IMG/VR virus record: IMGVR_UViG_3300024259_002152
Coordinates: 62,001 to 126,000 of that record
Direction: 5' to 3' (one strand)
DNA: 64,000 nucleotides
Within the stretch, counting starts at the first letter, position 1; every line of letters begins with the position of its first letter. The position numbers were made by a program, and so were the translations under genes. The notes under the pieces are model-generated. The model ran no database searches. It saw nothing but the letters and a program-made list of their open reading frames with translations, and was not told the DNA's origin. Shown one piece after another: positions 19,078-39,043 of the stretch.

Positions 19078-21036
19078 ATGGCTTATGCTCAGATACAAAA
19101 GATAGAGAATCCGAATCCTGGAGCTGCTCATGGTTTTGGGCAGAGATCTGTCATTGACGGGTATCATATAATAGTGGCTCGCGACGGTCATGATAGAGCG
19201 GATTTGTATAAAAGAAATGTTGGAGGAGCATGGATATATCAGGACGATAATGCTTACAAATGGGGTCAGTCCATGCATAATAATTATTTTACGTCTAATC
19301 TGACAGCCGTTAGTCAAGGCGGTTATATATGGCATAAAGATGATTTCAACACCACTTTGAGATATTTTAATCCTACAGATTTTGTTTCGACTTCTGATTT
19401 TCCTAAGTCATCCGCCATCTCAGATGATTTGGTGATTTTTGGAGATTATGGATATAACTTAAATCGAGGAGCAGTAGTTGTTTTTGAAAGGATAGGTTTA
19501 GATACGTGGACTGCTAACGATGATTATACTTTGTTAACTCCGGATATAAGCAATGAAAATGATTATTTTGGCTATTCGGTTGCGACTAATGGTGAATCAA
19601 TTATAGTTGGAGCCTATGGGGATAATCAAGGCAAGGGAACGGTTTATATTTTTCAAAAAGATGCGGATACGGGGTTATGGGAGCAAACTCAAAAATTGTT
19701 TGCTTCTGATGGGGAATCTAACGATCGTTTTGGTGAATCTGTTTCTGCTTCTGGAGATTATTTTATTGCAGGAGCCAGCTTAAAGGATAGTTTAAATGGG
19801 GATGTAAATTCTGGAGCTGCATATGTGTTTAAATATTCTACAGGTTGGTATGAGGTTGATAGGTTAGTAGGTATTGGTGAAGATGATTATGAAGGGAATC
19901 ATTTTGGAGAATCTGTTTATATTAATGGAGATCATATTATAGTTGGTTCTCCTGAAGCTAGAAGTGGGAGAGGTGTGGCAGATATTTTTTACAAGAAAAG
20001 AAGCTGGGGTCATTTAACAAAACTTGTAGGGTCGGATTCGTCAGTAAATGATAACTTCGGTACTTCTGTATCTATTTCTGGAAGATTTGCTGCGGTTGGT
20101 TCTCCTAGCTACGAATCGGCTACTACTGGGGGCGCGGTTTATTTGTATGAAGATTCCCCCGTAAGATTGAGATTAGCACAAGAGTTTGAAGTTAATAGTC
20201 AGTTTGTACCGACTAAAGCATCTGTTTATTTAAAAAGGGTAGGAAAAAATACGAGTAATTATTGGCCTATTTATAATACTGTTAAAACTGTTATAGATGC
20301 CACCAATTTTTCCACCATAGATAAAGAAAATAATATTGTTATATTTGGTGACACGGTTTCTGGATTTACTGGTAATGGGTATATGATTCTTAGTAGTGAT
20401 AATCCGTCTTTTTCTGATTTTGATATGAGTGTTATAAATTATCCTATTAGAGCAATAACTCCCGATACGTATAATCTATGGATTAGATGTATAAATATTA
20501 ATACTAATATTTTTGAAGCAGAAATATTAATAGATGGGATAACATTTAAAACTATCGATACTCTCATAGATAATCCTTCTGATGGGTTGGAGTGGACTTG
20601 GGTGAATACTACTCTTGTTTTGCCTGATGCTAGAGAACATATTTTAGGAATAAAGATGAAGGAAAATGGGTCTGCTATTGATAAAATATATATAGAGGCT
20701 GATAATACAACCCCTTATACAGAAGGTCCTGATTATAGTCTTAGTCCATATTTAACTGCTCATATGCAAGTTTATGATTCTCTTCGTGGAGAACCAGGAA
20801 TCTCTCTTTATATTTATGATTATAAGAATAGTATAACAGAAATTATTCAAGACGATTGGTATAATTTTGATATAAAAGTATTGGACAATATCCACGGGTA
20901 TAATGAAGCAAATGATTTTACAGAAGATTATTATTTAGTTATGTCAGTGGCAGGCTCTAACACTTCTAATTTTATTATTTGGGAATTGATTGATAATGAT
21001 GAATATGTGGCACCATCATCAGCAATTAAGTTTTAA
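19078..21036 (+). CDS. FG-GAP repeat beta-propeller protein with C-terminal carbohydrate-binding-like domain
   Basis: 652 aa; DYFGYSVATNGESIIVGA, DRFGESVSASGDYFIAGA, NHFGESVYINGDHIIVGS, DNFGTSVSISGRFAAVGS. Confidence 0.8.
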   Translation: MAYAQIQKIENPNPGAAHGFGQRSVIDGYHIIVARDGHDRADLYKRNVGGAWIYQDDNAYKWGQSMHNNYFTSNLTAVSQGGYIWHKDDFNTTLRYFNPTDFVSTSDFPKSSAISDDLVIFGDYGYNLNRGAVVVFERIGLDTWTANDDYTLLTPDISNENDYFGYSVATNGESIIVGAYGDNQGKGTVYIFQKDADTGLWEQTQKLFASDGESNDRFGESVSASGDYFIAGASLKDSLNGDVNSGAAYVFKYSTGWYEVDRLVGIGEDDYEGNHFGESVYINGDHIIVGSPEARSGRGVADIFYKKRSWGHLTKLVGSDSSVNDNFGTSVSISGRFAAVGSPSYESATTGGAVYLYEDSPVRLRLAQEFEVNSQFVPTKASVYLKRVGKNTSNYWPIYNTVKTVIDATNFSTIDKENNIVIFGDTVSGFTGNGYMILSSDNPSFSDFDMSVINYPIRAITPDTYNLWIRCININTNIFEAEILIDGITFKTIDTLIDNPSDGLEWTWVNTTLVLPDAREHILGIKMKENGSAIDKIYIEADNTTPYTEGPDYSLSPYLTAHMQVYDSLRGEPGISLYIYDYKNSITEIIQDDWYNFDIKVLDNIHGYNEANDFTEDYYLVMSVAGSNTSNFIIWELIDNDEYVAPSSAIKF

Positions 21037-21047
21037 AGGGATGTTTA

Positions 21048-24000
21048 ATGTCGTTTAGTTTATTAGAATATTATAAAGCTCTAAATGGAGAGTCAACAGA
21101 GAGTAGTAATGTATGGCATATTAATTATACTAAAAGGCATGCTTATAGAATATCTAGCGATTTTGATGCTATAGATGAACATAATAAAAAGATCAATTTA
21201 CCTCCGTCAGAGGCAGAAACAGATCTTGTGAATGTATTTTCTGACAAGTTGGGGCAGAAGTTAAAAAATACTAAGATTACAGATAATGGGGATGGAACGG
21301 AGAGTATAGATTTAGAGCTAGATGATAGGATTGTAACTATTATTATGGACCAAAGTGGCAGTATGACATGGAATGACCATAACAATTTTCGTCATGATGT
21401 GGCGACTGATTTAGTTAATAAAATAGAGATCAATTATCCAGGAGATATCACATATAATCTTATAGAATATGGTGCTGATATTATTAATGTTTTATTTTTT
21501 GGGATTATTGAGAATGATTCTTTTGATCCTAATGATATTGATAGTCTTAGTAAAATGATAAAAGCAGATGATCTTGCTAATTATGATGGAATGAGAATTA
21601 TTAGGAATGATGATCATTATCCTACTTCTGTTCTTGATGGGGAAATAGTGGATGATGGATTTATTAGCAGAATTAAAGATAGCGGATTGGTAGAGGGGCA
21701 TACATATTATTATACTATTTATACTTATGATAAAGATTATAAGTTCAGTGAGGGTGTTAGAGTTAAAGTAACTTCGAGAGCAAGAGTAGTTCCTAGATCT
21801 ATTTCTAATTTTAGGACAGTGGTAAATTCAGAAGATTTAACTAAAGGTGTTCCTTTTACAGGTTATGGTATTAATAGGGATGATAATACTGTGGGTATCT
21901 GGCACATGGATGAGGGAGAAGGAAAGTTTTTATATGATTTTAGTGATAATGATAATATATTAGAGCATAGTAAAGAAAATCCTATTTGGTATGAAAGTAG
22001 ATTTGTTCCTGCAGGGACTTCGGGACTATTTTTTGATGGGGTGGGTGATTATGCTTATTTGGATGGGGTTTCAGAGTTGGAACTTTCATCTCAAACATCT
22101 ACTACAGTATGTGCTTGGATTTATCCATATTCTGTTGATGGTCTTTATGTTATTGCTAGCTCTATGCAGGCAGATACTATTTCTTTTATTCTTTATACGC
22201 TTAATGGAAGATTACATCTTATCCAGAATTATGGAGACGTTCGATATAATGCTTATAGTAATGATGCTCTAATAGAGGTTAATAAATGGCAGCATGTTTG
22301 TGTAACTACTACTGGCGGAATATTTACATTATATATTAATGGGATTGAAATATCCTATGGTCTAACAACCGCATCACCAGTGCTAATAGGAACAACTAAT
22401 CTTCGTTTTTCTATTGGAGTTTATCGTTCGGACTCTTTTCCATTTCTTTATTATTTTAGAGGCAAAATAACAGAATTTAGTATTCATAATACCGTAAGGG
22501 ATCTGGCATACATACAATCTCAAGTGGTTTCTAATCCTATTTTAAATTCAGAAGGAGGTCAAGTAGATAGCGAGTTTTCAGGAATAAAGGAAGATAATGG
22601 AGATAGACTGGCAGTTTTTAAATATAATGTTCCTAAAGATTATAACTATGTTGGAGGAGAAATTTCTGTTGTAAGAAATGAAAAGCATATTCCTTCATGG
22701 GAGGAAGACGGAGATATAATTTATCAAGTTGACGACCCTGGTTCGGGGGAATTCTTTATATCTAATGTTGATGATTTTGTGCTGGGAGAGAAATATTATT
22801 ATAGATTATTTACTAAAAACTCTTTGGGTAATGTTAGCTTTCTGTCGGATTCTCCCTCATTGACTGTAGAAATTCCAGAAGCGGCTACAGATGACTACTT
22901 TTTAGATTTAGATACTTCTGTTCTTTTAAATCCTTCAGGAGATCCTATTGGTACTAAAGGTGATGCTATAGACTCACCTGAATCTCCAGATGTTGGCCAG
23001 TTAATTACTTCTGGAAATGGGAAGGTTTACTTAAGATGGAAACAAAATGACCCTATAGATAGTAGAATAGCAAGAGTTAAAATATTTTATTCTTCTTCGG
23101 ACTTTCCTGTTGTGAATATTAATGGTGGATCAAGTGGGCGGTTAGTTTTTACTGGATTGACGACAGATGAAAAATTTGTTCATAGGAATATTCCTAACGA
23201 TATTAATGCTTACTATACAATAGTTAATACTGATAAGTATGGAAGATCTTCTAATTATAATGAAGATGGTGTTCAAGTAGAAGATTTCTTACATGCTTCG
23301 GTGGTGCCTACTTCTTCTGCCAATGAAAATACATTTCCATTGATAGAAATTGAAAATGTTAATTATGAATTGGTTGATAGTAATACTATTACTATAGGGT
23401 GGGACCAACCTCAAAAAAGTATAGAAGATATAGAAGCATATTTTGATCAAACAATATATGTATATGGCGCTATTTCAGATGAATTTGGAGATGCTATTTC
23501 AGAAGATACTCCTATTAAAATGAGTATCACTGCTGCTATTAGTAGAGAGACACAAGCAGATGATATTTTTGGTGGTGGAGTATTAACTCAATTTGAAGAT
23601 ATAGAAGCTTATGATTTTTTTGTTACAAAAACTAATGATGGATTCTTTAAAGGCGTATTAAGGATGACCTCTAATGTTTCTATTATGGCCCAAATAAGAG
23701 AAGCTACTTTTCAGATACAATTGAAAGCGTTAATTCCTAGAGAGGGAGGGTATACGCCTCCTAATGATAATACTATAAGTGGAGATCCTATATCAGAATA
23801 TGCTAGTTTGATCGAACAGTTAGCAGGGGAAGAAGAAAGCACATCCACATCGAGTGATAATTTTTATGAATATTATTCTAAAACGATACAAGTTCATTAT
23901 ACTAATCCTTGGGAAGTAGAATTAGTAGGTAGAGATAATCAGAAGGTTTATCAAAGATGTTATTGTGTAAAAACGGATGAAAAGACTTCTGAGAAAGTTC

Positions 24001-27000
24001 TTAATGTAGAATCAGCATCTTTTCATGGTATATATATGAAAGCAACAAATCCGTTTGTTGCACGAGCAAAGGTAAAATATAAAGGACAACCTCTGGAATC
24101 GGGAAATATACAATTGGCGGTATGGGACGCTGATTCTACGGAGCTTTGTAAAAATTCATGTTCTGGTTCCTCTTCCTCTCCTTCTTCATCTTATGAAGGA
24201 CCAAAGCTTCAGCCTAGCATAACGGTTCCTCCTCCTGATTCTATTTTGTCTATTATTCAAGGTCAAGAAGAAACCTATGATGGCAGCGGAGTATATACTG
24301 ACATATCATACGTTGATATACCCTTATATGCCCCAGAAGCGTTTCAAGCTGTTAGACTATTTGTGAAAGGAGAAAAAGCGGGATATTCTTCTGTTAAAGA
24401 TATATACATTCTGTTTCAGAGTATATTGCTGATTGATATAGATACGAATTCTGAGGGTCTTACTGTTGATGGAAAGGATATTGCTGAATTTAGATCTAAT
24501 GCTTTCATTATAAATCCAGATTATCCTAATTATTATATTCCTGATTCTCTTGATGCGTCGTTAGTAACATATCCTGAAGATTTAACAGTTGTCCAATGGG
24601 ATGTTGAGTTTATACAGGCGATAGATGGGGCAGCAGGTAGCGGACCGAGATCTATTTACTCAACTGATAGTGTTCCATTAACTAATGGTGTTTACTCTTA
24701 CACTCGTAGTGGAACTGCTAGAAATGTGTTTTTAGGACCTGTTCCCAAAGGGGATGAAAAGATTAATGAAGATCATGAGATTAAGGCATCAATTGTATAT
24801 CAGGGTTTGTCATCGTTTGCTAAAACATTCTTTAGTGTTGGTCCTTATGATCCTGAAGAATTTGATAGAACATCAGCCAGATTTTTGATGGAGATAGATG
24901 GTGGATGGGAAGGAGATCTTCCTAATCAATTGTATGGAGGTGGAGGGTGGTCAACAGCGGAAAATTGGCCTTTATGGACCGATGGTATTCATTACAAGAA
25001 AATTAAAATAAGTAGAAATCCAAGAATTGCCGAGTCAGGCACAGCAGCGGGAGAGTTTGCTTATGCGAATTGTTTTAGAGATTGTGCGTCAGATGATGAT
25101 AATGAATTATTAGAGTTAAGTTCTGGGCAGATAGTGGAAGTTTCATTAGGGGGGGTTACTGGTCCTGTTTCTAGTGCTATTGTTGATAGCACGAATCTTC
25201 TTAATTCTGAAGTAGAAATTTTACATGGAGAAATATATGAAGTAGAGGACGCCTATACTGGTTTGCATTATCTGGAAGTTGGTGATGAAGGATTTATAGA
25301 TAACGGAACTGCGTTTATTGAGTTAAATGCAGAAGATGTCTCAGATGTTACTTATTTTTATATAAGAATAAATAAAACTATTTCTGATTCAGGAAAAATT
25401 TCAGATGAATTCTGTGACGAACCAGAACCTGTGGTTATTAATGATTGTCTTTGTCTTAATGGGAGTGATGGGATCACAGAATGTGATGTGCCAGCATGGG
25501 AACCGACTTCGTATGTGAATGGAAAAACCACTGTATTTTTAAATAATAATCCATTGGTTTTAAATGGGGGAGGAAATATGTATAATGGTATTCCTCCGTG
25601 TCCTATATGTATGAACGAACCTTTGCTTATGGAAACTGTATGGAGAAAAGTTACAGATTATTTTTATGACACAGATTTAGGTAACCCTTCAAATGATTTT
25701 CTTTATCCTGTTGACACTTTTACAGATAGTAATAATTTTACAGATGATAATGGAGAAACTCTTGTAAAGCATACTTCGGATGTCACAATCAGGGTTAAAG
25801 TTTTATGGAGAGGTCAAAATGTTCCTGATGGCACTCCTGTTTATGTTTCTGTTGGAGATAATACAGCTTCTTCGTTGTTTGTTGCTAGCCAAAATGTATA
25901 TTATACACAAACAATTAGTACTGATTATAGTTATGTAGATGTTCTTATTAATGCTCGCAGATATATAGATTCAACAAGGACTGAGCAAATCGAGATATTT
26001 TCTACTTATGATGAAAGCGATAAAACGGTAAGGCATATAGGGCAAAATTATTCTCTTACTTTAGATAAAAAGAATAAAGAAATAGAAGAACCTCCAGTGC
26101 TTCCAGTAGATCCAAGTACAGGTATTGCTATAGATCCTGTCCCAATTACCCCATATTCTCCAACAATGGACAGATATAGTATTACGGATAATGGATGGGA
26201 TAGAGTTTCCAATATGAGCGAAGCGAGAGGTAATGGTTTTTCCGGATCTGTAGGAAATTTTATTTATTATATAGGAGGGTTATTAGGAAATAGTCTTAAT
26301 ATATCTGATAAAAATGAACAATATGATATTCTTAATGATGAATGGAATGATGTAACAAAAATGACGATTCCTCGTTTTGGGGGTATGTCAGTTACTATCG
26401 GAGATGATATATATACGATAGGAGGAATTTTTTCTAATGATAAGACTGGCGGGAATCTTGGTGTAAGTATTTTAGTAGAAGTATATCATGCTGATGTTGA
26501 TATGTGGGAGGAACTCGAGCATATGCCGATAATAGCCGAGGGAAGTGCTTTTGAAAAAGAATTAGGAGTTGCATTTGGATCTGCATCTCATGTTATGATG
26601 GGAAAGAAGAATTATATATATATTGTTGGTGGAGTAAAAGATGCAATCGTAACTGCTGACCAATTTACTATAAGAGAACATAATCAAAGGATTTTAAGAT
26701 ATTGTGTAGAAGATGATGAATGGGAATATTCTAATATTTTGAGAAGTAATGAGTTAAATACTTATGAGAGAATTTCTCCTTTATCGATTGTTTTTGATAA
26801 TAAATTAATAGTATTTAATGGGGCTATTTTAGAGGGTAATAATTTTACCTATCCATCAGAAGAGTTTTATATAGATCTGTCAGGATCATTTGTTACTCCA
26901 TCTTCTGGGGAGTGGTTGACTTTGGGAAGCAATTGGTTACGTAGTGCCTCGGTTCCTAAGGCTCAGTCAGCAATGACAGAATACAATTTGAATCCCTCCG

Positions 27001-27275
27001 CTGATCATGCTGATTATTATATTTTTGGCGGGTTTAACAATAATTCTCCAAGTTTAGATATTACAGAAAAAATTACTGCTCAAGATAGTGGTTTTGAATA
27101 TTATTCTAGCTATAATATGCCAAATCCTTCAGTAGATTTGGAAAAAATGCTTATAGGTAAACATGGAGCTAGTGCAGAATTTTCTGATGTGGATGGTTCT
27201 CCGTTTATTTATCTTATGGGTGGTTATACAGTTAATAGAGATGATGATTATGTTGATATTTCTTTTGACCTTTAG
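21048..27275 (+). CDS. Giant multidomain protein: VWA N-half (DxSxS), LamG, FN3-like, C-terminal Kelch propeller
   Basis: 2075 aa; IIMDQSGS (21342-21362); VGIWHMDEGEG...KWQHVCVT...IYINGIE (LamG); Kelch repeats IYYIGG, IYTIGG, IYIVGG, YYIFGG, IYLMGG with W-x-x-x-x-x-M spacers. Confidence 0.75.
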   Translation: MSFSLLEYYKALNGESTESSNVWHINYTKRHAYRISSDFDAIDEHNKKINLPPSEAETDLVNVFSDKLGQKLKNTKITDNGDGTESIDLELDDRIVTIIMDQSGSMTWNDHNNFRHDVATDLVNKIEINYPGDITYNLIEYGADIINVLFFGIIENDSFDPNDIDSLSKMIKADDLANYDGMRIIRNDDHYPTSVLDGEIVDDGFISRIKDSGLVEGHTYYYTIYTYDKDYKFSEGVRVKVTSRARVVPRSISNFRTVVNSEDLTKGVPFTGYGINRDDNTVGIWHMDEGEGKFLYDFSDNDNILEHSKENPIWYESRFVPAGTSGLFFDGVGDYAYLDGVSELELSSQTSTTVCAWIYPYSVDGLYVIASSMQADTISFILYTLNGRLHLIQNYGDVRYNAYSNDALIEVNKWQHVCVTTTGGIFTLYINGIEISYGLTTASPVLIGTTNLRFSIGVYRSDSFPFLYYFRGKITEFSIHNTVRDLAYIQSQVVSNPILNSEGGQVDSEFSGIKEDNGDRLAVFKYNVPKDYNYVGGEISVVRNEKHIPSWEEDGDIIYQVDDPGSGEFFISNVDDFVLGEKYYYRLFTKNSLGNVSFLSDSPSLTVEIPEAATDDYFLDLDTSVLLNPSGDPIGTKGDAIDSPESPDVGQLITSGNGKVYLRWKQNDPIDSRIARVKIFYSSSDFPVVNINGGSSGRLVFTGLTTDEKFVHRNIPNDINAYYTIVNTDKYGRSSNYNEDGVQVEDFLHASVVPTSSANENTFPLIEIENVNYELVDSNTITIGWDQPQKSIEDIEAYFDQTIYVYGAISDEFGDAISEDTPIKMSITAAISRETQADDIFGGGVLTQFEDIEAYDFFVTKTNDGFFKGVLRMTSNVSIMAQIREATFQIQLKALIPREGGYTPPNDNTISGDPISEYASLIEQLAGEEESTSTSSDNFYEYYSKTIQVHYTNPWEVELVGRDNQKVYQRCYCVKTDEKTSEKVLNVESASFHGIYMKATNPFVARAKVKYKGQPLESGNIQLAVWDADSTELCKNSCSGSSSSPSSSYEGPKLQPSITVPPPDSILSIIQGQEETYDGSGVYTDISYVDIPLYAPEAFQAVRLFVKGEKAGYSSVKDIYILFQSILLIDIDTNSEGLTVDGKDIAEFRSNAFIINPDYPNYYIPDSLDASLVTYPEDLTVVQWDVEFIQAIDGAAGSGPRSIYSTDSVPLTNGVYSYTRSGTARNVFLGPVPKGDEKINEDHEIKASIVYQGLSSFAKTFFSVGPYDPEEFDRTSARFLMEIDGGWEGDLPNQLYGGGGWSTAENWPLWTDGIHYKKIKISRNPRIAESGTAAGEFAYANCFRDCASDDDNELLELSSGQIVEVSLGGVTGPVSSAIVDSTNLLNSEVEILHGEIYEVEDAYTGLHYLEVGDEGFIDNGTAFIELNAEDVSDVTYFYIRINKTISDSGKISDEFCDEPEPVVINDCLCLNGSDGITECDVPAWEPTSYVNGKTTVFLNNNPLVLNGGGNMYNGIPPCPICMNEPLLMETVWRKVTDYFYDTDLGNPSNDFLYPVDTFTDSNNFTDDNGETLVKHTSDVTIRVKVLWRGQNVPDGTPVYVSVGDNTASSLFVASQNVYYTQTISTDYSYVDVLINARRYIDSTRTEQIEIFSTYDESDKTVRHIGQNYSLTLDKKNKEIEEPPVLPVDPSTGIAIDPVPITPYSPTMDRYSITDNGWDRVSNMSEARGNGFSGSVGNFIYYIGGLLGNSLNISDKNEQYDILNDEWNDVTKMTIPRFGGMSVTIGDDIYTIGGIFSNDKTGGNLGVSILVEVYHADVDMWEELEHMPIIAEGSAFEKELGVAFGSASHVMMGKKNYIYIVGGVKDAIVTADQFTIREHNQRILRYCVEDDEWEYSNILRSNELNTYERISPLSIVFDNKLIVFNGAILEGNNFTYPSEEFYIDLSGSFVTPSSGEWLTLGSNWLRSASVPKAQSAMTEYNLNPSADHADYYIFGGFNNNSPSLDITEKITAQDSGFEYYSSYNMPNPSVDLEKMLIGKHGASAEFSDVDGSPFIYLMGGYTVNRDDDYVDISFDL

Positions 27276-27283
27276 GGAATAAA

Positions 27284-30200
27284 ATGGCTACAACTAATGA
27301 ATATAAAATAATTGTAGATAAGATAGATGGTAAAAAATCTATTTCTATTCCTGTGGACTTTAAAAAGAACGGGGTATATATTCCCGATGTGCTTGATGTT
27401 ATTGTTAGGGGTTTCTTAAAATTTGAAGAGACCGTGACTCAAACATCAGAAGATAGTTTAAACGAATTAGAAGATAAAACGGTAGTTCATCCTGTTGTTT
27501 TTTCAAGTGATACTATTCGTATTAGTAATGGTCGATGTGTCATTGTTCTTTTGCCAAGATCAGAAGATTTGTTTGAGGAAACGAGTACAGTTCAATCTAG
27601 AGCAGGGGAAACGATTACTGATAGTATGATCATATCAGATGGTGGGGTTAGAGCAGATGAGCAGATTACTGATCCAGATAAAATTCCAGTAGTTATTAAG
27701 ATAGAGACAGGAGTTACAAGAAAACCTTATAAAATATCTTTACAGGTTACTGTTACTTCTGTAAATGATGATAGTTTTTATATCCAAACTATTGATAGGG
27801 GAACTAGTCCTAAAATAGAAGAAGTATCTGCTTCTAAATCATTATTCCATAAGGCTACAGCTAGAATTTCTAGTAACTTAATCATTAATTGTGAAACCGA
27901 TCTTGAATGGATACCTTCGGTTAACTCTATTTTGGGAAGTAATAATGGTTCCCAAAATATTATTTTAGATGAAATAGAAAAGTTAAAAAATTCGACACCT
28001 CTCGGTACTTCTACAATGTTTGATGCTGTAGTTGCTGGTGATAGAATATTATCTGATAGCGATGTTAATAATAGTAAAAAAACTATCTATTTATTTACTG
28101 ATAATGAAGCAAATATTTCAGTTGCTTCTATACAAAACGCCATTGATGAAACTAATGATATAGATGGGAATAAAGAGGTTCCTATTCTTGTAGGTAATAT
28201 GGCAATTTCTGATAATGCTACTTTGTCCATAAAAGCTAATAGATCAGATACTAAGACTATTAATCAGTTGGCTTTTGAGACAGGAGGGCAAAGTATAACG
28301 GTAGCAGATGAAGATTATTTAGATGATATTGTTGGAATATTTTATAGAGAAGCTGTTGGATCAATGGGGTATGGAACTTATGAATTTATTAATGATTTCG
28401 GAGAGGAAGTTTTAATCAATAGAATTTCTGCCAGTTTTACTATACCTTCTTCTGATTCTAATGCTACATGGACAATAGAAACAAGTTTAGATGGATATAA
28501 TTACACAGCAATAAATCTTAATTATAATTCCACAGATAGTGTTTCTTTTAGCAATCTTCTAGTAAGATATATAAGATTTAAAATCATTATGGTTACAGGA
28601 ATTAGTTCAGTACCTGTGGATGAATATGGAACAACTCCTGCCACTCCTTCTTTAGAATCAATAGAAATAGTATTTAATGCTAATAAGGTAGCTTATTTGT
28701 ATCTAAACAAAGAAGATGTTACGGTCCCTCCGTATCAAATAACATTGGGAGTAGATGCTAATGAAATAAATGATGATCAAATTAAAGTAGGAGTGGCTAA
28801 ATCAGATGCTGTTAATTGGAATGATTATTTCACAGAATCTCAACCCACTGTTGATCAAAATGGTAAAGTAGTTATACCCATAAGATTTTCACAGGACGTT
28901 ACACAATTTGAGCACGAACCATTAAGAAAAATAGATAATTTTGCAACAAAAACGGAATATGGAAGATGGGATCAGAATGCTAGAGTTATTATATATGATA
29001 AGAATAATGCTCCAATGCCAACAGATTACTATAATACTCACCCGAGAGAAGGAAGAATAGTTTTTAATACGGCACTCCCTTCTGATTATCAAGATGGCGA
29101 TTATAAGATAGGTATTTTGAATGTGGGAGAGTATAAGGTTGGTCTAGAATTAACTAATAAAACAGAAACAGATACATTAGATATTTATGGAATAGGATAC
29201 GAATATACTACAGGTAAAAATTTATTGCCGCCTGTCTCTAAGGCGTCTCCTGAAGTACAACAAGTTGCTATTTCTAATGAAACTCCTAATAGATTTAGTC
29301 TTATTACGCTTACCTATATCTATTTTGACTCTAACTTTGATCCAGAAGATACTTCTAAAAGAGTTATTACATGGTATATAAATGGAGTGCCAAATGCAGC
29401 TTTAAATAATATGATACAATGGAATAATATTAATGATTTTCAAGATCCTTTATATACTACCACTGCTTTGGAATATCCCGACATTGATGATTTAAATGGT
29501 CTTACAATATCCGAATGGGTTCAACAACAAACAGTATCACTAATAAAAGCGGGAGATATTATTCATGCTGAAGTTAATGTGAGTGATGGAGAATTGTTGA
29601 GCGATAAAGGGACATCTATTCCTGTAACAGTAATTGAATCTGTTCCTGTTTTAACTGGTTTAAATATTAAGGGTAGAGATCCTGATGGGAATATTATTTC
29701 GAGGATAGCGACTAATACTGATGCTATAATAGATCCTCCTTTGACAGAATCATTCTTTAGTGATAGTGGTGGAGATAATCAGTCGCAAATAATATGGTAT
29801 GTTAATGATGAAATATTTAAGCAAGGTGTTTATGGAGATACTTTGCCTGAAGGACAACCTCCAATAACAGAAATAAGAGTTAATGAGATAGCTTCAGGGA
29901 CTTTGATTGATTATGGTTTAAGAATTACTAATTCTATTTATGTTCAGGTCATTCCCAAAACAAGTAGTACTGATGGGGCATTGGTAACAAGTCCTGCTAT
30001 TATCGTACAAAATGCTATACCCACAGTTTTTGATTTAACATATCTTACTAATGTATTTGTTCCAACAAATGATATTATTCTAGATTATGAATTTTTTGAT
30101 TTTGAGGTGATCGCTCTAGGAGATGTTGATGAAACGTTACAGGAAGATCAGACTATGGTTAGATGGTATAGGAAAAACCCAGGAGATAATAATTTTACCT

Positions 30201-30427
30201 TGGTTTATGGTTTTAATGATGTAGACAATGGGCTGCAAGAGACATTTTATGTCGAAGAATATCGAGGATTTATTACTACTAATATAGCAGAGACAAATAC
30301 TACTGTGAGTAAGGACATATTGTTTGAGAATCAAAAATTTTACTGTGTTATAACTCCATTTGATACGATCGATTATGGAACTCCTGTGAGTTCAGAAACT
30401 GTTACAATCACATCATCTACTAATTAA
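27284..30427 (+). CDS. Structural protein containing the C-terminal half of a VWA domain and Ig-like repeats
   Basis: 1047 aa; TPLGTSTMFDAV...KKTIYLFTDNE...INQLAFETGGQS; no DxSxS motif seen; Ig-like modules resembling those of 4395..6482. Confidence 0.65.
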   Translation: MATTNEYKIIVDKIDGKKSISIPVDFKKNGVYIPDVLDVIVRGFLKFEETVTQTSEDSLNELEDKTVVHPVVFSSDTIRISNGRCVIVLLPRSEDLFEETSTVQSRAGETITDSMIISDGGVRADEQITDPDKIPVVIKIETGVTRKPYKISLQVTVTSVNDDSFYIQTIDRGTSPKIEEVSASKSLFHKATARISSNLIINCETDLEWIPSVNSILGSNNGSQNIILDEIEKLKNSTPLGTSTMFDAVVAGDRILSDSDVNNSKKTIYLFTDNEANISVASIQNAIDETNDIDGNKEVPILVGNMAISDNATLSIKANRSDTKTINQLAFETGGQSITVADEDYLDDIVGIFYREAVGSMGYGTYEFINDFGEEVLINRISASFTIPSSDSNATWTIETSLDGYNYTAINLNYNSTDSVSFSNLLVRYIRFKIIMVTGISSVPVDEYGTTPATPSLESIEIVFNANKVAYLYLNKEDVTVPPYQITLGVDANEINDDQIKVGVAKSDAVNWNDYFTESQPTVDQNGKVVIPIRFSQDVTQFEHEPLRKIDNFATKTEYGRWDQNARVIIYDKNNAPMPTDYYNTHPREGRIVFNTALPSDYQDGDYKIGILNVGEYKVGLELTNKTETDTLDIYGIGYEYTTGKNLLPPVSKASPEVQQVAISNETPNRFSLITLTYIYFDSNFDPEDTSKRVITWYINGVPNAALNNMIQWNNINDFQDPLYTTTALEYPDIDDLNGLTISEWVQQQTVSLIKAGDIIHAEVNVSDGELLSDKGTSIPVTVIESVPVLTGLNIKGRDPDGNIISRIATNTDAIIDPPLTESFFSDSGGDNQSQIIWYVNDEIFKQGVYGDTLPEGQPPITEIRVNEIASGTLIDYGLRITNSIYVQVIPKTSSTDGALVTSPAIIVQNAIPTVFDLTYLTNVFVPTNDIILDYEFFDFEVIALGDVDETLQEDQTMVRWYRKNPGDNNFTLVYGFNDVDNGLQETFYVEEYRGFITTNIAETNTTVSKDILFENQKFYCVITPFDTIDYGTPVSSETVTITSSTN

Positions 30428-30770: not shown

Positions 30771-31478
30771 ATGATTATAGATATAATATTATTAACTTAC
30801 AATAATGTAGAAAATACTAAACAATGTATAAATAATCTTTACAAATTTACTGATAATTTTGGTTTAGTTATTTTAGATAATCACTCCACAGATGGTACTG
30901 TTGATTATTTGAAAAAAATATCAGACCAAAATGATAATATAACTTTATTCCTTTCTGATCTTAATTTGGGTATTATTAATGGCAGGAATAGTGCGTACAA
31001 ATTATCAAAAGGAACTGACTATATCGTTTTTCTCGATAATGATCAATATGTTCAAAAAGATTGGTTGGATAGTTATTTAAAATTAATGATAGATAAAGAA
31101 TTTGATTTGATTGGTTGTGAAGCATGGAAAATGAGAGAAAAAGATTTTTACCCATATAAAAAAATAATAGATAACAATGACACTTTTTCCTATGTCGGCG
31201 CTGGTGGATTAATGATTAAGAATAAGATATTCGAAAAATTAGGATTATTCGATGAAGATTATGATTTTATCTATTTTGAAGATCCTAGTTTATGCTTTAA
31301 GGCACATTATCAGGGATATAAAATAGGATGGAATTATAATCCAATAATAGACCATAATCATAAGGGGGCATTGTTAAGCAATGAGAATAGGAAATATTTT
31401 CTGAACAATTGGAAAGTATTTCAGAATAAATGGCAGGGAAAAAGAATCCCTATCTTCTCAAATACTGTTGAAAAGTGA
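30771..31478 (+). CDS. Glycosyltransferase family 2
   Basis: IILLTYN, ILDNHSTDGT, NLGIINGRN, YIVFLDND (DxD), FDEDYDFIYFED. Confidence 0.9.
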   Translation: MIIDIILLTYNNVENTKQCINNLYKFTDNFGLVILDNHSTDGTVDYLKKISDQNDNITLFLSDLNLGIINGRNSAYKLSKGTDYIVFLDNDQYVQKDWLDSYLKLMIDKEFDLIGCEAWKMREKDFYPYKKIIDNNDTFSYVGAGGLMIKNKIFEKLGLFDEDYDFIYFEDPSLCFKAHYQGYKIGWNYNPIIDHNHKGALLSNENRKYFLNNWKVFQNKWQGKRIPIFSNTVEK

Positions 31479-31502
31479 AAAAGTATCATATAAAAGTATA
31501 AT
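31468..31502 (+). promoter_or_regulatory. Putative promoter (copy 2), ATG at predicted +1
   Basis: TTGAAAAGTGAAA at 31468; ATG at 31503 is 35 nt downstream; the -10 position reads TAAAAG (weak). Confidence 0.6.
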
Positions 31503-32594
31503 ATGAAACTAGGAATATTTTGTAATTTTTCATATAAGCATGTTGGTGGCTCTGAAAATGTTATTAAGAACATATCGGACAGATTAGTCAACGATTTTGA
31601 TTATGAGGTAAATGTTTATAGTTTCAGCGTTAATGCTCCTTTTTACGAGAATAAGGTTAGATATTTTCCTTGTAAAAAGGGAGATGGACTGTTTGCTCAG
31701 ATTGCTCAAAACGACCATATCTTTATTTATAGTGATTCTTTTTGGCAGCTCGATACATTACTCCAAAATATCGATAAAATCGATTGTAGGGCATCCTTGG
31801 CACTCGTAGGTGCTTACCATTTACAATCTCATCCTGAATCTTTTAGATTATTAAAAGAGAATATAGAGAAATTTAATCTTATTACCCATTCTGAGACAAC
31901 TCCTGACTATAAGTGGTGTATTGACAATAACTTACCTGTTAAAGTGGTGCCCAACGGGGTTGATTTGTCTGAATTTTGGGAAAATAGAGTAAATTTTCGT
32001 GAAAAGTATAAAATAAAAGAAAAATATATTATTCTTAGCGTTTTTTCATATTTTTTTGGCAAAGGGTTTGAAATTCTTCCCAAAATAGCTGAAAAACTAT
32101 CAGAGCATTTAGATGATTTTTTAATTCTACAATGCTCAAACACCTCCCAGTACCCCTATGATAAACCATTTTTTGAGAGGACAAAAAAACAAAGTAGAGG
32201 ACTACCTATAAGGTTTTTAAGGGATATTCCTAGGGAAGATATTGTTTCGGCTTTTAATTGTTCTGATGTGTTTTTATCGCCAAGTAAGAAAGAAGTTGCT
32301 CCTATTGTTATTCTAGAATGTAGAGCGGCGAAATTGCCTTATGTTTCTTTTGCTGTGGGGAATGTTGGAGAACAAGGAGGAATTCCTTTGATAGTCCAAC
32401 AAAAGGATAATAAGGGTTATGCTATAGTTGAGAAGAGAGATATTGATCATTTTTCTGCTGCTATACTTCAACTATTGACCTGTAAAGATGAGAGATATAA
32501 AAATATAGTAATAGAAAAAGGACAACACTTTATAAACAACATTGATTGGGACAATATAGTTCTTTTGTATGATAGAGAATTTAGACATGAATAA
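31503..32594 (+). CDS. Glycosyltransferase family 4 (GT-B)
   Basis: GGSENV, VVPNGVDL, SDVFLSPSKKEVAPIVILECRAAKLPYV. Confidence 0.9.
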   Translation: MKLGIFCNFSYKHVGGSENVIKNISDRLVNDFDYEVNVYSFSVNAPFYENKVRYFPCKKGDGLFAQIAQNDHIFIYSDSFWQLDTLLQNIDKIDCRASLALVGAYHLQSHPESFRLLKENIEKFNLITHSETTPDYKWCIDNNLPVKVVPNGVDLSEFWENRVNFREKYKIKEKYIILSVFSYFFGKGFEILPKIAEKLSEHLDDFLILQCSNTSQYPYDKPFFERTKKQSRGLPIRFLRDIPREDIVSAFNCSDVFLSPSKKEVAPIVILECRAAKLPYVSFAVGNVGEQGGIPLIVQQKDNKGYAIVEKRDIDHFSAAILQLLTCKDERYKNIVIEKGQHFINNIDWDNIVLLYDREFRHE

Positions 32595-32901
32595 ATTAAT
32601 AGGAACTACTGTATTTTATTGGCATGATGCTAAAAAGGAAATGCCAAAGTATGATAGGCCAGTTCTCTTAAAAAGAGAGCCACGTGATAAAGGCAATCCA
32701 ACAAGAGAGAATTTTATTAGTGCATGTCGGAAAATAGATTGGTCCGACGGGCAGGATTATTGGGATTATGTTGGGAAGGTATTTGAAGAATATGAGTTTA
32801 ATGTTGTTGGTTGGGCATATCTGGCAGAAATGGTATCTAATGATATATCAGAGAATAAGACAAGTGAAATAAATGATAGATTTGAGATATTAGATTTATA
32901 G
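32569..32901 (+). CDS. DUF551-like small phage protein with C-terminal RFEILDL tag (start probably ATG 32587)
   Basis: WHDAKKEMP...VVGWAYL pattern; ends INDRFEILDL*. Confidence 0.65.
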   Translation: MIENLDMNKLIGTTVFYWHDAKKEMPKYDRPVLLKREPRDKGNPTRENFISACRKIDWSDGQDYWDYVGKVFEEYEFNVVGWAYLAEMVSNDISENKTSEINDRFEILDL

Positions 32902-32914
32902 AAAAGGAGAAAAA

Positions 32915-33103
32915 ATGAGCAAAACATGTAAAGAATGTAAAGGTAAGGGAAAGATAAAAAAGAAAGAATGTGATACCTGTCATGGGTTTGGATGGGTAGA
33001 ATGTCGCTGTGGGTCATATTGTTGTAAAGAGTGTAATCCAGCCAGTAATGAGGAATCAACTATGTTATTTCCTGGTTGTTCGTTCGGAAAGTGTAACGAT
33101 TAG
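32915..33103 (+). CDS. Small Cys-rich (DnaJ-type CxxCxGxG) zinc-finger protein
   Basis: CKECKGKG, CDTCHGFG, additional Cys; AGGAG RBS upstream. Confidence 0.65.
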   Translation: MSKTCKECKGKGKIKKKECDTCHGFGWVECRCGSYCCKECNPASNEESTMLFPGCSFGKCND

Positions 33104-33106
33104 ATT

Positions 33107-33820
33107 ATGAGCACTCCATTAGTTAGTGTAATTACGACAGCATATAATTGTGAAAAATATATAAAAGAGTCTATAAATTCTATTATTAATCAGACTTTTA
33201 GAGACTTTGAGATTGTCGTTTATAACGATGCTTCTACGGATAAAACGTGGGACATTGTTTTTCATATGGATTTATTTTGTGATCATAATATTTTTAGAGG
33301 AGATAAAAATGTGGGTTGTGGAGAAGGGAGAAATAGGGCGATAAAACAAGCAAGAGGGAAATATATAGCGATACAGGATGCTGATGATATAAGTCTTCCA
33401 GAGAGATTGGAGAAAGAAGTCAATTTTTTAGAAGAGAATGATGATATATTTTGTGTGGGAGCATGGGCCATAAAGATAAAAGAAGATGGTAGTTTTATCG
33501 AATCTATGACATATCCTCGTTCTGCACATGAAAAAATATATGAAGATATAATAGTTAAAAAAAATAATCCTATTATTGATCCTTCTTGTATGTATAGGAG
33601 GGGATTGTTTAATGAATTAGGGGGTTATGATGGTCGATGGAAACTAGTTCCTGATTTTAATCTGTGGGCTAGAGCGGCTAAAGCAGGTTTTAAATTTTTC
33701 AATTTTCAGGAAGCATTGGTGTATTATCGTCAACATCCTAATAGTGTGACAAATAAGAGTGAAATGGCTGTCGTTAGAGAGCATTACAGGATGTGTAAAG
33801 AGGTTTTAGGGAATAAATAA
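33107..33820 (+). CDS. Glycosyltransferase family 2
   Basis: PLVSVITTAYN, YNDASTD, ARGKYIAIQDADD, DFNLWAR. Confidence 0.92.
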   Translation: MSTPLVSVITTAYNCEKYIKESINSIINQTFRDFEIVVYNDASTDKTWDIVFHMDLFCDHNIFRGDKNVGCGEGRNRAIKQARGKYIAIQDADDISLPERLEKEVNFLEENDDIFCVGAWAIKIKEDGSFIESMTYPRSAHEKIYEDIIVKKNNPIIDPSCMYRRGLFNELGGYDGRWKLVPDFNLWARAAKAGFKFFNFQEALVYYRQHPNSVTNKSEMAVVREHYRMCKEVLGNK

Positions 33821-37518: not shown

Positions 37519-38472
37519 TTGATGATGGCACAAAAAGATGCTAAAGATATTCTCAGAGATATAAAGGCAGATATAGAAGGGGTAGACCCTAAAGACATAC
37601 AGTTTCAAGACTTACGTAAAAGAAGAAATAAAAAAAAGAAAGTAGAAAAATCTAATGAAAGTGAAAGTGGAAGTGGTATAATTGGAAACACTGAAGGTTT
37701 CTCACTTTTGGAAGTAGAGACTAAATGTTGCGATTATAGAGATATAAGTAAGAAAGGAAAGTTGAGAGAAAAGGGTAGTCTTGAGGAGTGGGGACCTTTT
37801 GATTTTTTTAAATTTGCTCATAAATTATATGTTAATCGATATCAGATAGAGTGGGATTTAAATATGGGGGGAAGTAGTCTTGAGATTAACCGGATTAAAG
37901 ATAAGTTTGTTGATGTTTTCGGTTATTGTTGTAATTTAATGATATATGATTATATTGTTTATTTTTTCGAATATCATATTGATTATTTTAAGAATAAAGA
38001 TGGTTTTTATTTTAGCCAAATGAAAACAGATTGGATAATTCTAACATTTCAAGAGACATATGATTTTAGAGAGCGTTTCGTTAATTATATGACGCAGAAA
38101 AAACAAAAGAATAAGAAATATCAATTAACACATGATGAAATTCAAAAATCTTATGATATGGGCGATACAACTTTAATTGGGAATTATGGAATTGTTATCG
38201 CTTTAAACTGGCTTTTGAAGATAAAGAAGATTAACAAAAAAGATGCGATAAAGGTTGTCGTTGATGCATGTAAAGATATGTATAAAAAGCATTTGATAGA
38301 TGTTGTCCAAAGCGCAACGGAGATATATTCTCCATATCCTGTTAATCTAATATTCAAAAGTCCTCAACTTGTTCTAAATAAAATAGATAAAAATATTAAA
38401 CTTAAAGTAGAGTTTAATGATAATAATCAAATGGAATTTTTACAAAAGGGAGATAATACGAAAGGTGCTTAA
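37519..38472 (+). CDS. Hypothetical protein
   Basis: 317 aa; basic N-terminus; TAATG-coupled to infC. Confidence 0.6.
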   Translation: MMMAQKDAKDILRDIKADIEGVDPKDIQFQDLRKRRNKKKKVEKSNESESGSGIIGNTEGFSLLEVETKCCDYRDISKKGKLREKGSLEEWGPFDFFKFAHKLYVNRYQIEWDLNMGGSSLEINRIKDKFVDVFGYCCNLMIYDYIVYFFEYHIDYFKNKDGFYFSQMKTDWIILTFQETYDFRERFVNYMTQKKQKNKKYQLTHDEIQKSYDMGDTTLIGNYGIVIALNWLLKIKKINKKDAIKVVVDACKDMYKKHLIDVVQSATEIYSPYPVNLIFKSPQLVLNKIDKNIKLKVEFNDNNQMEFLQKGDNTKGA

Positions 38473-38981
38473 TGGAACGAACATATAATGTTAACGGCCA
38501 GATCGAAGCAGATATAGTTAATTTGGTTTTGACTGATGGACAAGTTAAGAAGGCTATTAGTTTATCTGATGCACTAGACATTGCTGAAGATGAAGGGTTA
38601 GATGTTGTAGAAGTATCTTCAAATGGGGAAAATGGTATTCCTGTTTGTAAGATGATAGATTATGGCAAAATGATGTATCAACAAAGAAAAAAGAAAAAGA
38701 ATCAAAAGCAAATACAGCATGTTAAAGAGATTAAATATAATTTAAATATTGGTTCTCATGATCTTGGCATTAGACATACAAAGATATTAAAGTTTTTATC
38801 AAAAAAATATACTGTTAAATATACTTTGGAACTTAATGGCAGAGAAAGGAATATGATTGATAGTGCTGTAGTTACAATTAATAAAAATTTGGAAGAATTT
38901 AGAGATGTGGCGACATGGAAACCTCCAAAAGTTTCAACAGGTAGAAGAGTAACGATATCTACCACTCTTGTCCCAGTATAG
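38472..38981 (+). CDS. infC: Translation initiation factor IF-3 homolog
   Basis: VNGQI...ALDIAEDEGLDVVEVS...PVCKMIDYGKMMYQQRKK...VKEIK...HDL...KFL...GRE. Confidence 0.9.
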   Translation: MERTYNVNGQIEADIVNLVLTDGQVKKAISLSDALDIAEDEGLDVVEVSSNGENGIPVCKMIDYGKMMYQQRKKKKNQKQIQHVKEIKYNLNIGSHDLGIRHTKILKFLSKKYTVKYTLELNGRERNMIDSAVVTINKNLEEFRDVATWKPPKVSTGRRVTISTTLVPV

Positions 38982-38983
38982 TG

Positions 38984-39012
38984 TTGAAAAGTGAAAAGTA
39001 AGTTGTTAATTT
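38984..39012 (+). promoter_or_regulatory. Putative promoter (copy 4)
   Basis: TTGAAAAGTGAAA at 38984; -10 position TAATTT at 39007-12. Confidence 0.6.
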
Positions 39013-39043
39013 AGTAGTAGTGTTTTTAGAAAAGGATTAATAG

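What the first reader, a model, noticed from the sequence alone, without database searches (positions are those of the whole stretch)
21327..28342. A VWA/MIDAS domain apparently split between two adjacent giant genes
Seen in sequence: ORF 21048 has only beta1-alpha1-beta2 with the MIDAS DxSxS (RIVTIIMDQSGS...YNLIEYG, 21327-21473) and then diverges into LamG, FN3-like and Kelch domains. ORF 27284 has only the second half (QNIILDEIEKL...TPLGTSTMFDAV...KTIYLFTDNE...QLAFETGG...DDIVGIF, 27953-28342), supplying the MIDAS Thr and distal Asp. Established knowledge: MIDAS needs DxSxS, T and D from one Rossmann fold. Inference: the two proteins complement to build one metal site, locking them together as a metal-dependent joint in a virion appendage, or an ancestral gene took a ~2000-aa insertion and then split.
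Basis: partly seen in the sequence, partly recalled or inferred. Interest (0 to 1): 0.7.

Follow-up and report, generated by a model that had tools for sequence, protein, structure and literature searches.

The report
VWA metal-site domain split across two genes
Two neighbouring giant genes of an uncultured huge phage each carry one half of a single von Willebrand-A (integrin-like, metal-binding) domain; relatives encode both halves in one ~3000-residue protein, so the domain probably reassembles from two chains, though that is not yet shown.

Summary

- **ORF A** (21048-27275, 2075 aa) has only the first part of a VWA domain: strand A with DxSxS, helix 1, and strands B and C, at aa 94-155.
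- **ORF B** (27284-30427, 1047 aa) has only the rest, at aa ~220-361. An AlphaFold model of it matches the C-terminal ~60% of solved VWA domains, starting at the MIDAS Thr position.
- **MIDAS residues.** All five positions are near-invariant across the family. They are A D101/S103/S105 and B S243/D273. The "Thr" position is in fact a Ser.
- **Fused relatives.** In 91 relatives both halves sit in one 2236-5031-aa chain, always 1450-2880 aa apart and never contiguous.
- **Origin of the split.** The window's split type forms one clade nested among fused forms, so a fused gene with a giant insertion most likely underwent fission. A different clade is split at a different point.
- **What is not shown.** Assembly of the two halves in trans is inferred from fold logic, co-occurrence and weak covariation. 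The one complex prediction gave no answer.

This is a new variant of a known domain kind. The proteins are probably tail appendages, judged from gene context only.

The parts
21048..27275 (+). ORF A, 2075 aa. Order of domains: N-terminal ~90 aa, VWA N-half, FN3-like, LamG, long beta-rich middle, C-terminal Kelch propeller.
21327..21512 (+). VWA N-half, ORF A aa 94-155: strand A (IVTIIM), MIDAS loop, helix 1, strand B (TYNLIEYG), strand C (IINVLFF).
   Evidence: Pfam VWA_2 profile positions 2-52/107; alignment
21348..21362 (+). MIDAS DxSxS: D101-Q-S103-G-S105.
   Evidence: D 150/150, S 149/150, S 149/150
21585..21797 (+). FN3-like domain directly after strand C (GHTYYYTIYTYD...FSEG). The chain leaves the VWA fold here.
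   Evidence: alignment; FN3-like Pur_ac_phosph_N hits in 6/37 members
22038..22508 (+). LamG (Laminin_G_3) domain, ORF A aa 331-487.
   Evidence: E 4e-17
26145..27272 (+). Kelch-type beta-propeller, ORF A aa ~1700-2075.
27273..27283 (+). Gene junction: TAG stop plus an 8-nt spacer (GGAATAAA) before the ATG of ORF B, which lies in another frame. It corresponds to a ~15-aa linker in the fused homologue P0099.
27284..30427 (+). ORF B, 1047 aa. Order of domains: N-terminal beta domain (aa 1-190), VWA C-half, jelly-roll (discoidin-like), tandem Ig/FN3-like domains.
27860..28366 (+). VWA C-half, ORF B aa 193-361: conserved lead-in strand and W209-P211, helix 2, G241-x-S243, helix 3, strand D with D273, helix 4, strand E, helix 5, strand F, helix 6.
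28010..28012 (+). S243, at the MIDAS Thr position.
   Evidence: 217 S + 3 T of 220. The structural alignments begin at T209 of CD11b, T221 of integrin alpha2 and T206 of LFA-1.
28100..28102 (+). D273, the distal MIDAS Asp at the end of strand D (IYLFTD).
   Evidence: 220/220
28370..28693 (+). Beta jelly-roll, ORF B aa 363-470. It is F5/8 type C (discoidin)-like in relatives.
   Evidence: PF00754 in P0121; P0050
29252..30424 (+). Tandem Ig/FN3-like domains, ORF B aa 657-1047 (pLDDT ~90).
19078..21036 (+). Upstream FG-GAP repeat (integrin-alpha-type propeller) protein, 652 aa. It keeps the same position in relatives.

Best explanation
ORF A and ORF B are the two products of a gene fission. The ancestral gene encoded a ~3000-aa protein whose single VWA/MIDAS domain is discontinuous. 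The chain leaves the fold after strand C, makes a 1500-2900-aa excursion (FN3, LamG, Kelch propeller, beta-sandwich) and returns at helix 2 to finish the domain.

In the window's clade a stop codon, an 8-nt spacer and a new start fell inside that excursion. Strand A with DxSxS, helix 1 and strands B and C now lie on ORF A. Helices 2-6, strands D-F and the Ser and Asp MIDAS ligands lie on ORF B.

The most likely mechanism is fold complementation in trans. Strand A of ORF A pairs with strand D of ORF B to close a six-stranded sheet. This ties the two giant proteins together non-covalently and creates one metal site with ligands from both chains.

The insertion point (end of the antiparallel strand C) lies on the face opposite the MIDAS. 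The metal face therefore stays free, probably to bind an acidic group on a host-surface ligand, as in integrin I domains and pilus-tip adhesins.

Shown: the two halves, their invariant MIDAS residues, fused relatives, and recurrent fission. Inferred: physical reassembly, metal binding, ligand binding, and virion or tail location.
For: 1. N-half only. ORF A matches VWA_2 profile 2-52/107, as do all 37 relatives tested. A small complete VWA protein in the same genome covers profile 1-106.
2. C-half only. AF2 predicts H-H-E-H-E-H-E-H for B 224-359. In a Foldseek-independent scan of 48,161 PDB representatives, all 50 best hits are VWA folds. They align model residues 49-170 with the C-terminal part of the target, for example CD11b 206-318, integrin alpha2 219-336, LFA-1 205-307, Rpn10 84-192 and TRAP 128-240. 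The alignments begin at the MIDAS Thr.
3. MIDAS positions are near-invariant: D101 150/150, S103 149/150, S105 149/150, S243 220/220 Ser or Thr, D273 220/220.
4. Co-occurrence. 91 proteins have both halves in one chain, with a gap of 1450-2880 aa and never contiguous. All C-only proteins but two (P0269, P0161) are 1730 aa or shorter, and N-only proteins run 1170-2432 aa. In this genome only ORF A has an N-half of this family and only ORF B a C-half.
5. Fission. ORF B aligns end to end with the C-terminal ~1050 aa of the fused proteins. The junction is collinear with a ~15-aa linker in P0099. The split clade is nested in fused forms.
6. Conserved synteny. The same split and gene order are kept at 35% identity (L007).
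7. Second fission site. A fission at another site, before the Kelch domain, gives a 1256-aa N-protein and a 1492-aa C-protein with TAATG overlap (L006).
8. Covariation. The top inter-half MI pair of 17,112 is Q102 (the x of DxSxS) with P239, next to G241-x-S243. Rank 4 is T107 with N274, next to D273. Enrichment in the MIDAS loops has P~0.02.
9. Protein language model. The nearest named clusters of both halves are all VWA (lead only).
Against: - No structural prediction or experiment shows the halves together. The only complex job scored 0.27 (runs 0.48, 0.26, 0.27), below the 0.32 mark, and is explicitly no evidence either way.
- The mean-field DCA did not reproduce the MIDAS-loop covariation. 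One MI pair (T107/N274) looks like a single clade change.
- The C-half profile does not reach canonical VWA proteins by sequence. It finds only 204 hits in 1.84 billion proteins, and every listed hit that was rechecked locally belongs to this family. PDB profile hits are at E 0.35.
- The C-half model has only pLDDT 68.
- ORF A's own VWA_2 score (17.5-22.7 bits) is below Pfam's cut-off of 27.
- ORF B has an extra conserved strand (aa 199-205) and W209/P211 before helix 2 whose role is unknown.
Confidence: 0.6

Rival explanations
1. Inter-protomer swap. The halves do complement, but between different copies. In fused forms this would be between subunits. In split forms the N-half of one A-B unit would pair with the C-half of the next. 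The discontinuous VWA would then act as an oligomerisation clasp that links subunits of a fibre or ring, rather than closing one A-B pair.
For: The fold logic and co-occurrence are the same as for the main explanation. A 1500-2900-aa excursion makes intramolecular closure topologically demanding. Phage fibres are usually oligomers (general knowledge).
Against: Nothing here distinguishes cis from trans pairing. No oligomer prediction could be run.
Confidence: 0.15
2. Two independent relics. The halves no longer form one domain. Each is stabilised by neighbouring domains: for example, the ORF B lead-in strand 199-205 and the upstream beta domain would fill in for strands A-C, and the FN3 domain would pack on the ORF A half. 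The conserved motifs would then serve separate roles.
For: The complex prediction did not reach the mark. The C-half is very divergent in sequence from canonical VWAs. ORF B has a conserved extra strand and W209/P211 before helix 2.
Against: All five MIDAS positions, spread over both halves, are invariant over sequences down to ~26-30% identity. A DxSxS loop, or a Ser/Asp pair, has no known function alone (established VWA knowledge). The halves never occur apart in a long protein. The all-hydrophobic strand A (IVTIIM) is typical of a buried central strand. Both halves model with low confidence when alone.
Confidence: 0.15
3. Artefact. The A/B boundary is an assembly or sequencing frameshift in a really fused gene.
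For: ORF A and ORF B are in different frames, 8 nt apart. One relative (L001) is clearly fragmented by frameshifts.
Against: About 65 independent metagenomic relatives, down to 35% identity, have a separate ~1010-1060-aa ORF B starting at the same position, with the C-half at aa 184-234. The spacer carries a Shine-Dalgarno-like AGGGA upstream of the ATG.
Confidence: 0.02

Closest known systems
Integrin alpha I domains and other MIDAS-bearing VWA domains (vWF A1-A3, TRAP, ANTXR2, Rpn10, TFIIH p44/p34)
   Same: DxSxS after strand A, Ser/Thr at the start of helix 3, and Asp after strand D. The C-half model superposes on their C-terminal ~110 residues at rmsd 2-3 A.
   Different: Their VWA is one contiguous ~180-200-aa domain in one chain. 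Here 1450-2880 aa are inserted between strand C and helix 2, and in this phage the two parts are separate polypeptides. The MIDAS Thr is Ser. Sequence similarity of the C-half to them is not significant.
Pilus-tip adhesins with a VWA domain that carries inserted arms or is nested in other domains (RrgA, SpaC, PitA, Mfa5, PilY1)
   Same: A surface appendage protein uses a MIDAS VWA together with Ig-like stalk domains. The VWA tolerates insertions. SpaC, PitA, Mfa5 and PilB are among the structural hits.
   Different: Their insertions are tens to ~100 aa and the domain stays in one chain (recalled knowledge, not tested here). No homology beyond the fold.
Integrin head (FG-GAP alpha-propeller plus beta-I VWA domain)
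   Same: An FG-GAP propeller protein is encoded immediately upstream of ORF A. An FG-GAP propeller is inserted into ORF A's homologue P0068.
   Different: There is no evidence that the propeller contacts the VWA, and no integrin-type hybrid or PSI domains. This resemblance is only a lead.
Gene fission and Rosetta-stone pairs; naturally split proteins that reassemble (split inteins, split enzymes)
   Same: Fused and split forms of the same protein coexist in related genomes. The split partners remain adjacent and co-oriented.
   Different: The break is not inside the domain itself. It lies in a giant insertion, so the domain became two-chain as a side effect. Reassembly is inferred, not shown.

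Membership tests
VWA superfamily (Pfam clan CL0128) | DxSxS motif immediately after a hydrophobic first strand | tested here: met
   ORF A I95-M100 then D101-Q-S-G-S105. Invariant in 149-150 of 150 members.
VWA superfamily (Pfam clan CL0128) | Ser/Thr MIDAS ligand at the start of helix 3 and Asp at the end of strand D | tested here: met
   ORF B S243 (217 S, 3 T of 220) and D273 (220/220). Structural alignments start at the MIDAS Thr of integrin I domains.
VWA superfamily (Pfam clan CL0128) | Complete six-stranded alpha/beta fold (strands C-B-A-D-E-F) within one polypeptide | tested here: not met
   ORF A covers VWA_2 profile 2-53/107 only. ORF B models only helices 2-6 and strands D-F. Neither ORF contains the other half.
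VWA superfamily (Pfam clan CL0128) | Complete fold formed by the two chains together | tested here: inconclusive
   Complex prediction scored 0.27, below the 0.32 mark, so gave no answer. There is weak MIDAS-loop covariation.
VWA superfamily (Pfam clan CL0128) | Score above Pfam's gathering threshold | tested here: not met
   ORF A scores 17.5-22.7 bits against a cut-off of 27 for VWA_2. ORF B has no hit. Fused relatives do pass (P0110 46.9 bits, P0099 27.6 bits, P0121 28.6 bits).
VWA superfamily (Pfam clan CL0128) | Divalent cation bound at the MIDAS | not testable with these tools
   Needs biochemistry or a structure.
Split (fissioned) gene pair derived from one ancestral gene | Collinear single-chain homologues exist, and the partners are adjacent and co-oriented | tested here: met
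   91 single-chain forms. ORF B aa 13-1043 aligns to their C-termini. Adjacency holds in the window, L007 and L006.
Phage tail fibre or adhesin | Presence in the virion, attached to the tail | not tested
   Context only. A tape-measure-like protein (phrog_794, E 5.5e-7) lies 42 kb upstream, followed by a run of giant LamG, FN3 and FG-GAP proteins. No Baseplate_J or sheath Pfam hits were found in the 73%-complete record.

The most novel reading that the evidence does not exclude
A natural two-chain VWA domain. The fold tolerates a 1.5-2.9-thousand-residue insertion in one loop, and it has repeatedly survived fission of that insertion at different sites. The domain would then act as a self-assembling clasp that joins two giant phage appendage proteins, with metal ligands from both chains, while still presenting an integrin-like ligand-binding metal site. 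This would be a new architectural use of the VWA fold and a possible natural split-domain tag.
Probability: 0.5. Interest if true: 0.65.

Novelty: new variant of a known kind. Interest (0 to 1): 0.55.

Why it matters
VWA/MIDAS domains are among the best-studied adhesion modules, and they are treated as compact, contiguous units. If this family folds as inferred, three things follow.

- The fold can host an insertion ten times its own size.
- The fold can be rebuilt from two polypeptides, which gives a genetically encoded non-covalent lock between giant virion proteins.
- The family (more than 200 clusters at 50% identity, on contigs up to ~550 kb) gives huge-phage biology a testable handle on how very large appendage proteins are assembled and how they may recognise hosts.

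It is also a clean natural case for studying the consequences of gene fission inside a nested-domain protein.

Tried and rejected
- **Known phages.** DNA and protein searches of ORF A and ORF B against 50,697 GenBank phage records found no match. A neighbouring ATPase finds only distant (~30% identity) phage hits that say nothing about lineage.
- **Single-sequence PDB searches** of either half found nothing meaningful. Profile searches gave only E~0.3-0.4 hits, although these were to VWA proteins in the right register.
- **P0061** looked like a short natural fusion that could have been folded whole. Its locus shows it is a fragment of a frameshift-broken long gene, so it was rejected.
- **Complex prediction** on the two halves with row-paired alignments gave no answer.
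- **Foldseek on the full ORF B model** was swamped by the Ig/FN3 tandem. The domain was therefore remodelled alone.
- **hhalign** of each half against the single extra VWA domain of P0110 was not significant, although the matches fell in the right order.
- **Mean-field DCA** on 111 paired sequences (Meff 103) gave noisy results with no MIDAS-loop enrichment. APC-corrected MI gave a weak signal only.
- **No short form exists.** No member with a contiguous VWA or a short insertion was found that could have been folded within the 1200-aa limit.
Full report
**1. Setting**

The window is bases 62001-126000 of a single 350,866-bp IMG/VR virus record, estimated 73% complete. GC is 32% and almost all genes lie on the + strand.

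ORF A (21048-27275, 2075 aa) and ORF B (27284-30427, 1047 aa) are adjacent. They are separated by TAG plus 8 nt (GGAATAAA) and lie in different frames.

Upstream are an FG-GAP propeller protein and two ~2000-aa LamG/FN3 proteins. Further upstream, at genome coordinates 37800-41177, is a protein with a weak tape-measure match. Downstream are glycosyltransferases and replication genes. A tail or appendage role is therefore a reasonable guess from context, and no more than that. Pfam models for baseplate J and tail sheath found nothing.

**2.

The quoted peptides are at the quoted coordinates: A R94-G142 and B Q224-F353.

ORF A matches Pfam VWA_2 over profile positions 2-52 of 107 and then stops. 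The same half-match occurs in all 37 aligned relatives, best E 1e-7. A small protein elsewhere in the same genome matches positions 1-106. After strand C the chain enters an FN3-like domain, then LamG (331-487), and ends in a Kelch propeller.

ORF B has no Pfam hit. Its aa 199-359 are predicted as E-H-H-E-H-E-H-E-H.

Modelled alone with 51 homologues (pLDDT 68), this region was compared with solved structures:
- Foldseek's best matches are mostly VWA folds, with some LarE hits among them.
- In a scan of 48,161 PDB representatives that does not depend on Foldseek, all 50 best matches are VWA-fold domains. They include integrin I and beta-I domains, vWF A1-A3, collagen VI/VII, TFIIH p44/p34, Rpn10, ITIH1, Sec23/24 trunk, BchD, TRAP, ANTXR2 and pilus-tip adhesins (Z 6.0-9.5).
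- In every case model residues ~49-170 (B 240-361) align with the C-terminal part of the target. Examples are CD11b 206-318, alpha2 219-336, LFA-1 205-307, Rpn10 84-192 and TRAP 128-240.
- From established numbering of those I domains, the MIDAS Thr is T209, T221 and T206 respectively. The alignment therefore starts at the MIDAS Thr, which corresponds to B S243.

Nothing in ORF B corresponds to strand A, helix 1, or strands B and C.

**3. Conservation**

Across 150 N-halves and 220 C-halves:

| Position | Conservation |
|---|---|
| A D101 | 150/150 |
| A S103 | 149/150 |
| A S105 | 149/150 |
| A G104, A D110 | 150/150 each |
| A W108 | 149/150 |
| B G241 | 220/220 |
| B S243 | 217 Ser + 3 Thr of 220 |
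| B D273 | 220/220 |

T242 and T244 are variable.

**4. Relatives**

ORF B has about 60 full-length homologues at 35-76% identity. The N-terminus of ORF A finds two kinds of protein: ~2000-aa forms and 2900-3450-aa forms. The long ones are A+B fusions, because ORF B aa 13-1043 aligns with their last ~1050 residues. The junction is collinear with a ~15-aa linker in P0099.

An exhaustive profile search with the C-half found only 204 proteins in 1.84 billion. Every listed hit that was rechecked locally belongs to this family.

Of 284 family proteins, 91 carry both halves in one chain. These are 2236-5031 aa long, and the gap between halves is 1450-2880 aa, never less. A further 133 proteins are C-only, all but two of them (P0269, P0161) 1730 aa or shorter. 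Another 60 are N-only, spanning 1170-2432 aa. In this genome no other ORF has either half.

**5. Direction of change**

The tree was built on the C-half plus ~430 following residues. The window's split type (65 rows, plus the 3 fused rows P0099, P0162 and P0165) forms one clade with support 98. That clade sits inside a clade with support 99 whose other branches are fused forms. Further fused clades lie outside (FastTree, midpoint root). Fusion is thus most parsimoniously ancestral, with fission near the base of the window's clade.

The same split and the same gene order are kept at 35% identity in L007.

In another clade the break is elsewhere. In L006 a 1256-aa protein with the N-half is followed, with TAATG overlap, by a 1492-aa Kelch protein with the C-half at aa 729-911. 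Fission therefore happened at least twice, at different points of the insertion, and both halves were retained each time.

**6. Do the halves form one domain?**

Arguments for:
- The secondary-structure elements are exactly complementary.
- The five ligands of one metal site are invariant although they are distributed over two halves.
- The halves never occur alone in a long protein.
- The family has survived independent fissions.
- Strand A is all-hydrophobic, as expected for a buried central strand.
- The best inter-half mutual-information pairs lie next to the MIDAS residues: Q102-P239 ranks 1 of 17,112 and T107-N274 ranks 4, with loop enrichment P~0.02.

Limits on that evidence:
- The single complex prediction gave 0.27 (one run 0.48), under the 0.32 mark. 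By the tool's own statement this is no evidence either way.
- Mean-field DCA did not confirm the MI signal, and one MI pair looks like a single clade change.
- No family member is short enough to fold whole.

I therefore put the two-chain VWA at 0.6.

**7. Mechanism (inference from the VWA fold)**

Strand C is antiparallel, so its end lies on the face opposite the MIDAS, as do the domain's own termini. The giant excursion would leave and re-enter there, leaving the metal face free.

The two chains would be held mainly by strand A-strand D pairing and the shared core. The metal, ligated by A D101/S103/S105 and B S243/D273, would add a bridge and probably bind an acidic ligand group. That makes this an adhesin head rather than a purely structural 'joint'.

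**8. Comparison and novelty**

The domain is a VWA by motif and fold but fails the single-chain completeness test. It is best described as a discontinuous VWA, and in this clade a two-chain one. I found no report of such an arrangement in two full-text searches. That is weak negative evidence.

It is a new variant of a known kind. It is interesting for protein architecture and huge-phage biology, but the key step rests on inference.

Noticed in passing
window 19078-21036; also L007 1137-3206: A 652-aa FG-GAP (integrin-alpha-type propeller) protein sits directly upstream of the VWA-bearing ORF A, and keeps that position in a relative at 35% identity. In the close ORF A homologue P0068, an FG-GAP propeller of ~360-400 aa is inserted at ORF A aa ~1976-1989. 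The pairing of an FG-GAP propeller with a MIDAS VWA recalls the integrin head.
   Followed up: partly
protein P0110 aa 2104-2290 (fused homologue): Some fused relatives carry an additional complete VWA domain (PF00092, E 7.8e-9, with its own DxSxS) inserted just before the C-half. It lies between the equivalents of ORF B aa ~172 and ~205. Other long forms have 160-290 extra residues at the same spot.
   Followed up: partly
window 28370-28693 (ORF B aa 363-470): A jelly-roll immediately after the VWA C-half is F5/8 type C (discoidin)-like in relatives (PF00754 in P0050, P0120, P0121). This suggests a carbohydrate- or surface-binding module next to the metal site.
   Followed up: no
L007 12668-13654: A relative carries an IS605 OrfB/TnpB (Cas12f-like) gene just downstream of its ORF B homologue. 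It is absent at the corresponding place in the window.
   Followed up: no
window 30771-33820: Three glycosyltransferase-like genes (PHROG hits E 1e-8 to 1e-12) directly follow the giant-protein block. They may glycosylate those proteins or modify host surface.
   Followed up: no
whole window and genome (G000:C1): Of the ORFs of at least 100 aa, 349 lie on the + strand and 51 on the - strand. GC skew is positive throughout, so cumulative skew rises monotonically across the window. The record has 13 ORFs of at least 900 aa, 11 of them between 25 and 92 kb.
   Followed up: partly
L001 (GenBank MAG contig labelled Candidatus Competibacteraceae): The homologous giant gene there is broken into at least four overlapping frames. 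The contig has the same phage-like gene order, so it is probably a binned phage contig with indel errors rather than bacterial DNA.
   Followed up: partly
genome 245626-246243 and 283387-285114 (outside the window): There are two other VWA-like ORFs in the same phage. One is a complete 205-aa VWA (VWA_2 profile 1-106, E 2e-7). The other is a 575-aa protein matching VWA_2 profile 5-87.
   Followed up: no
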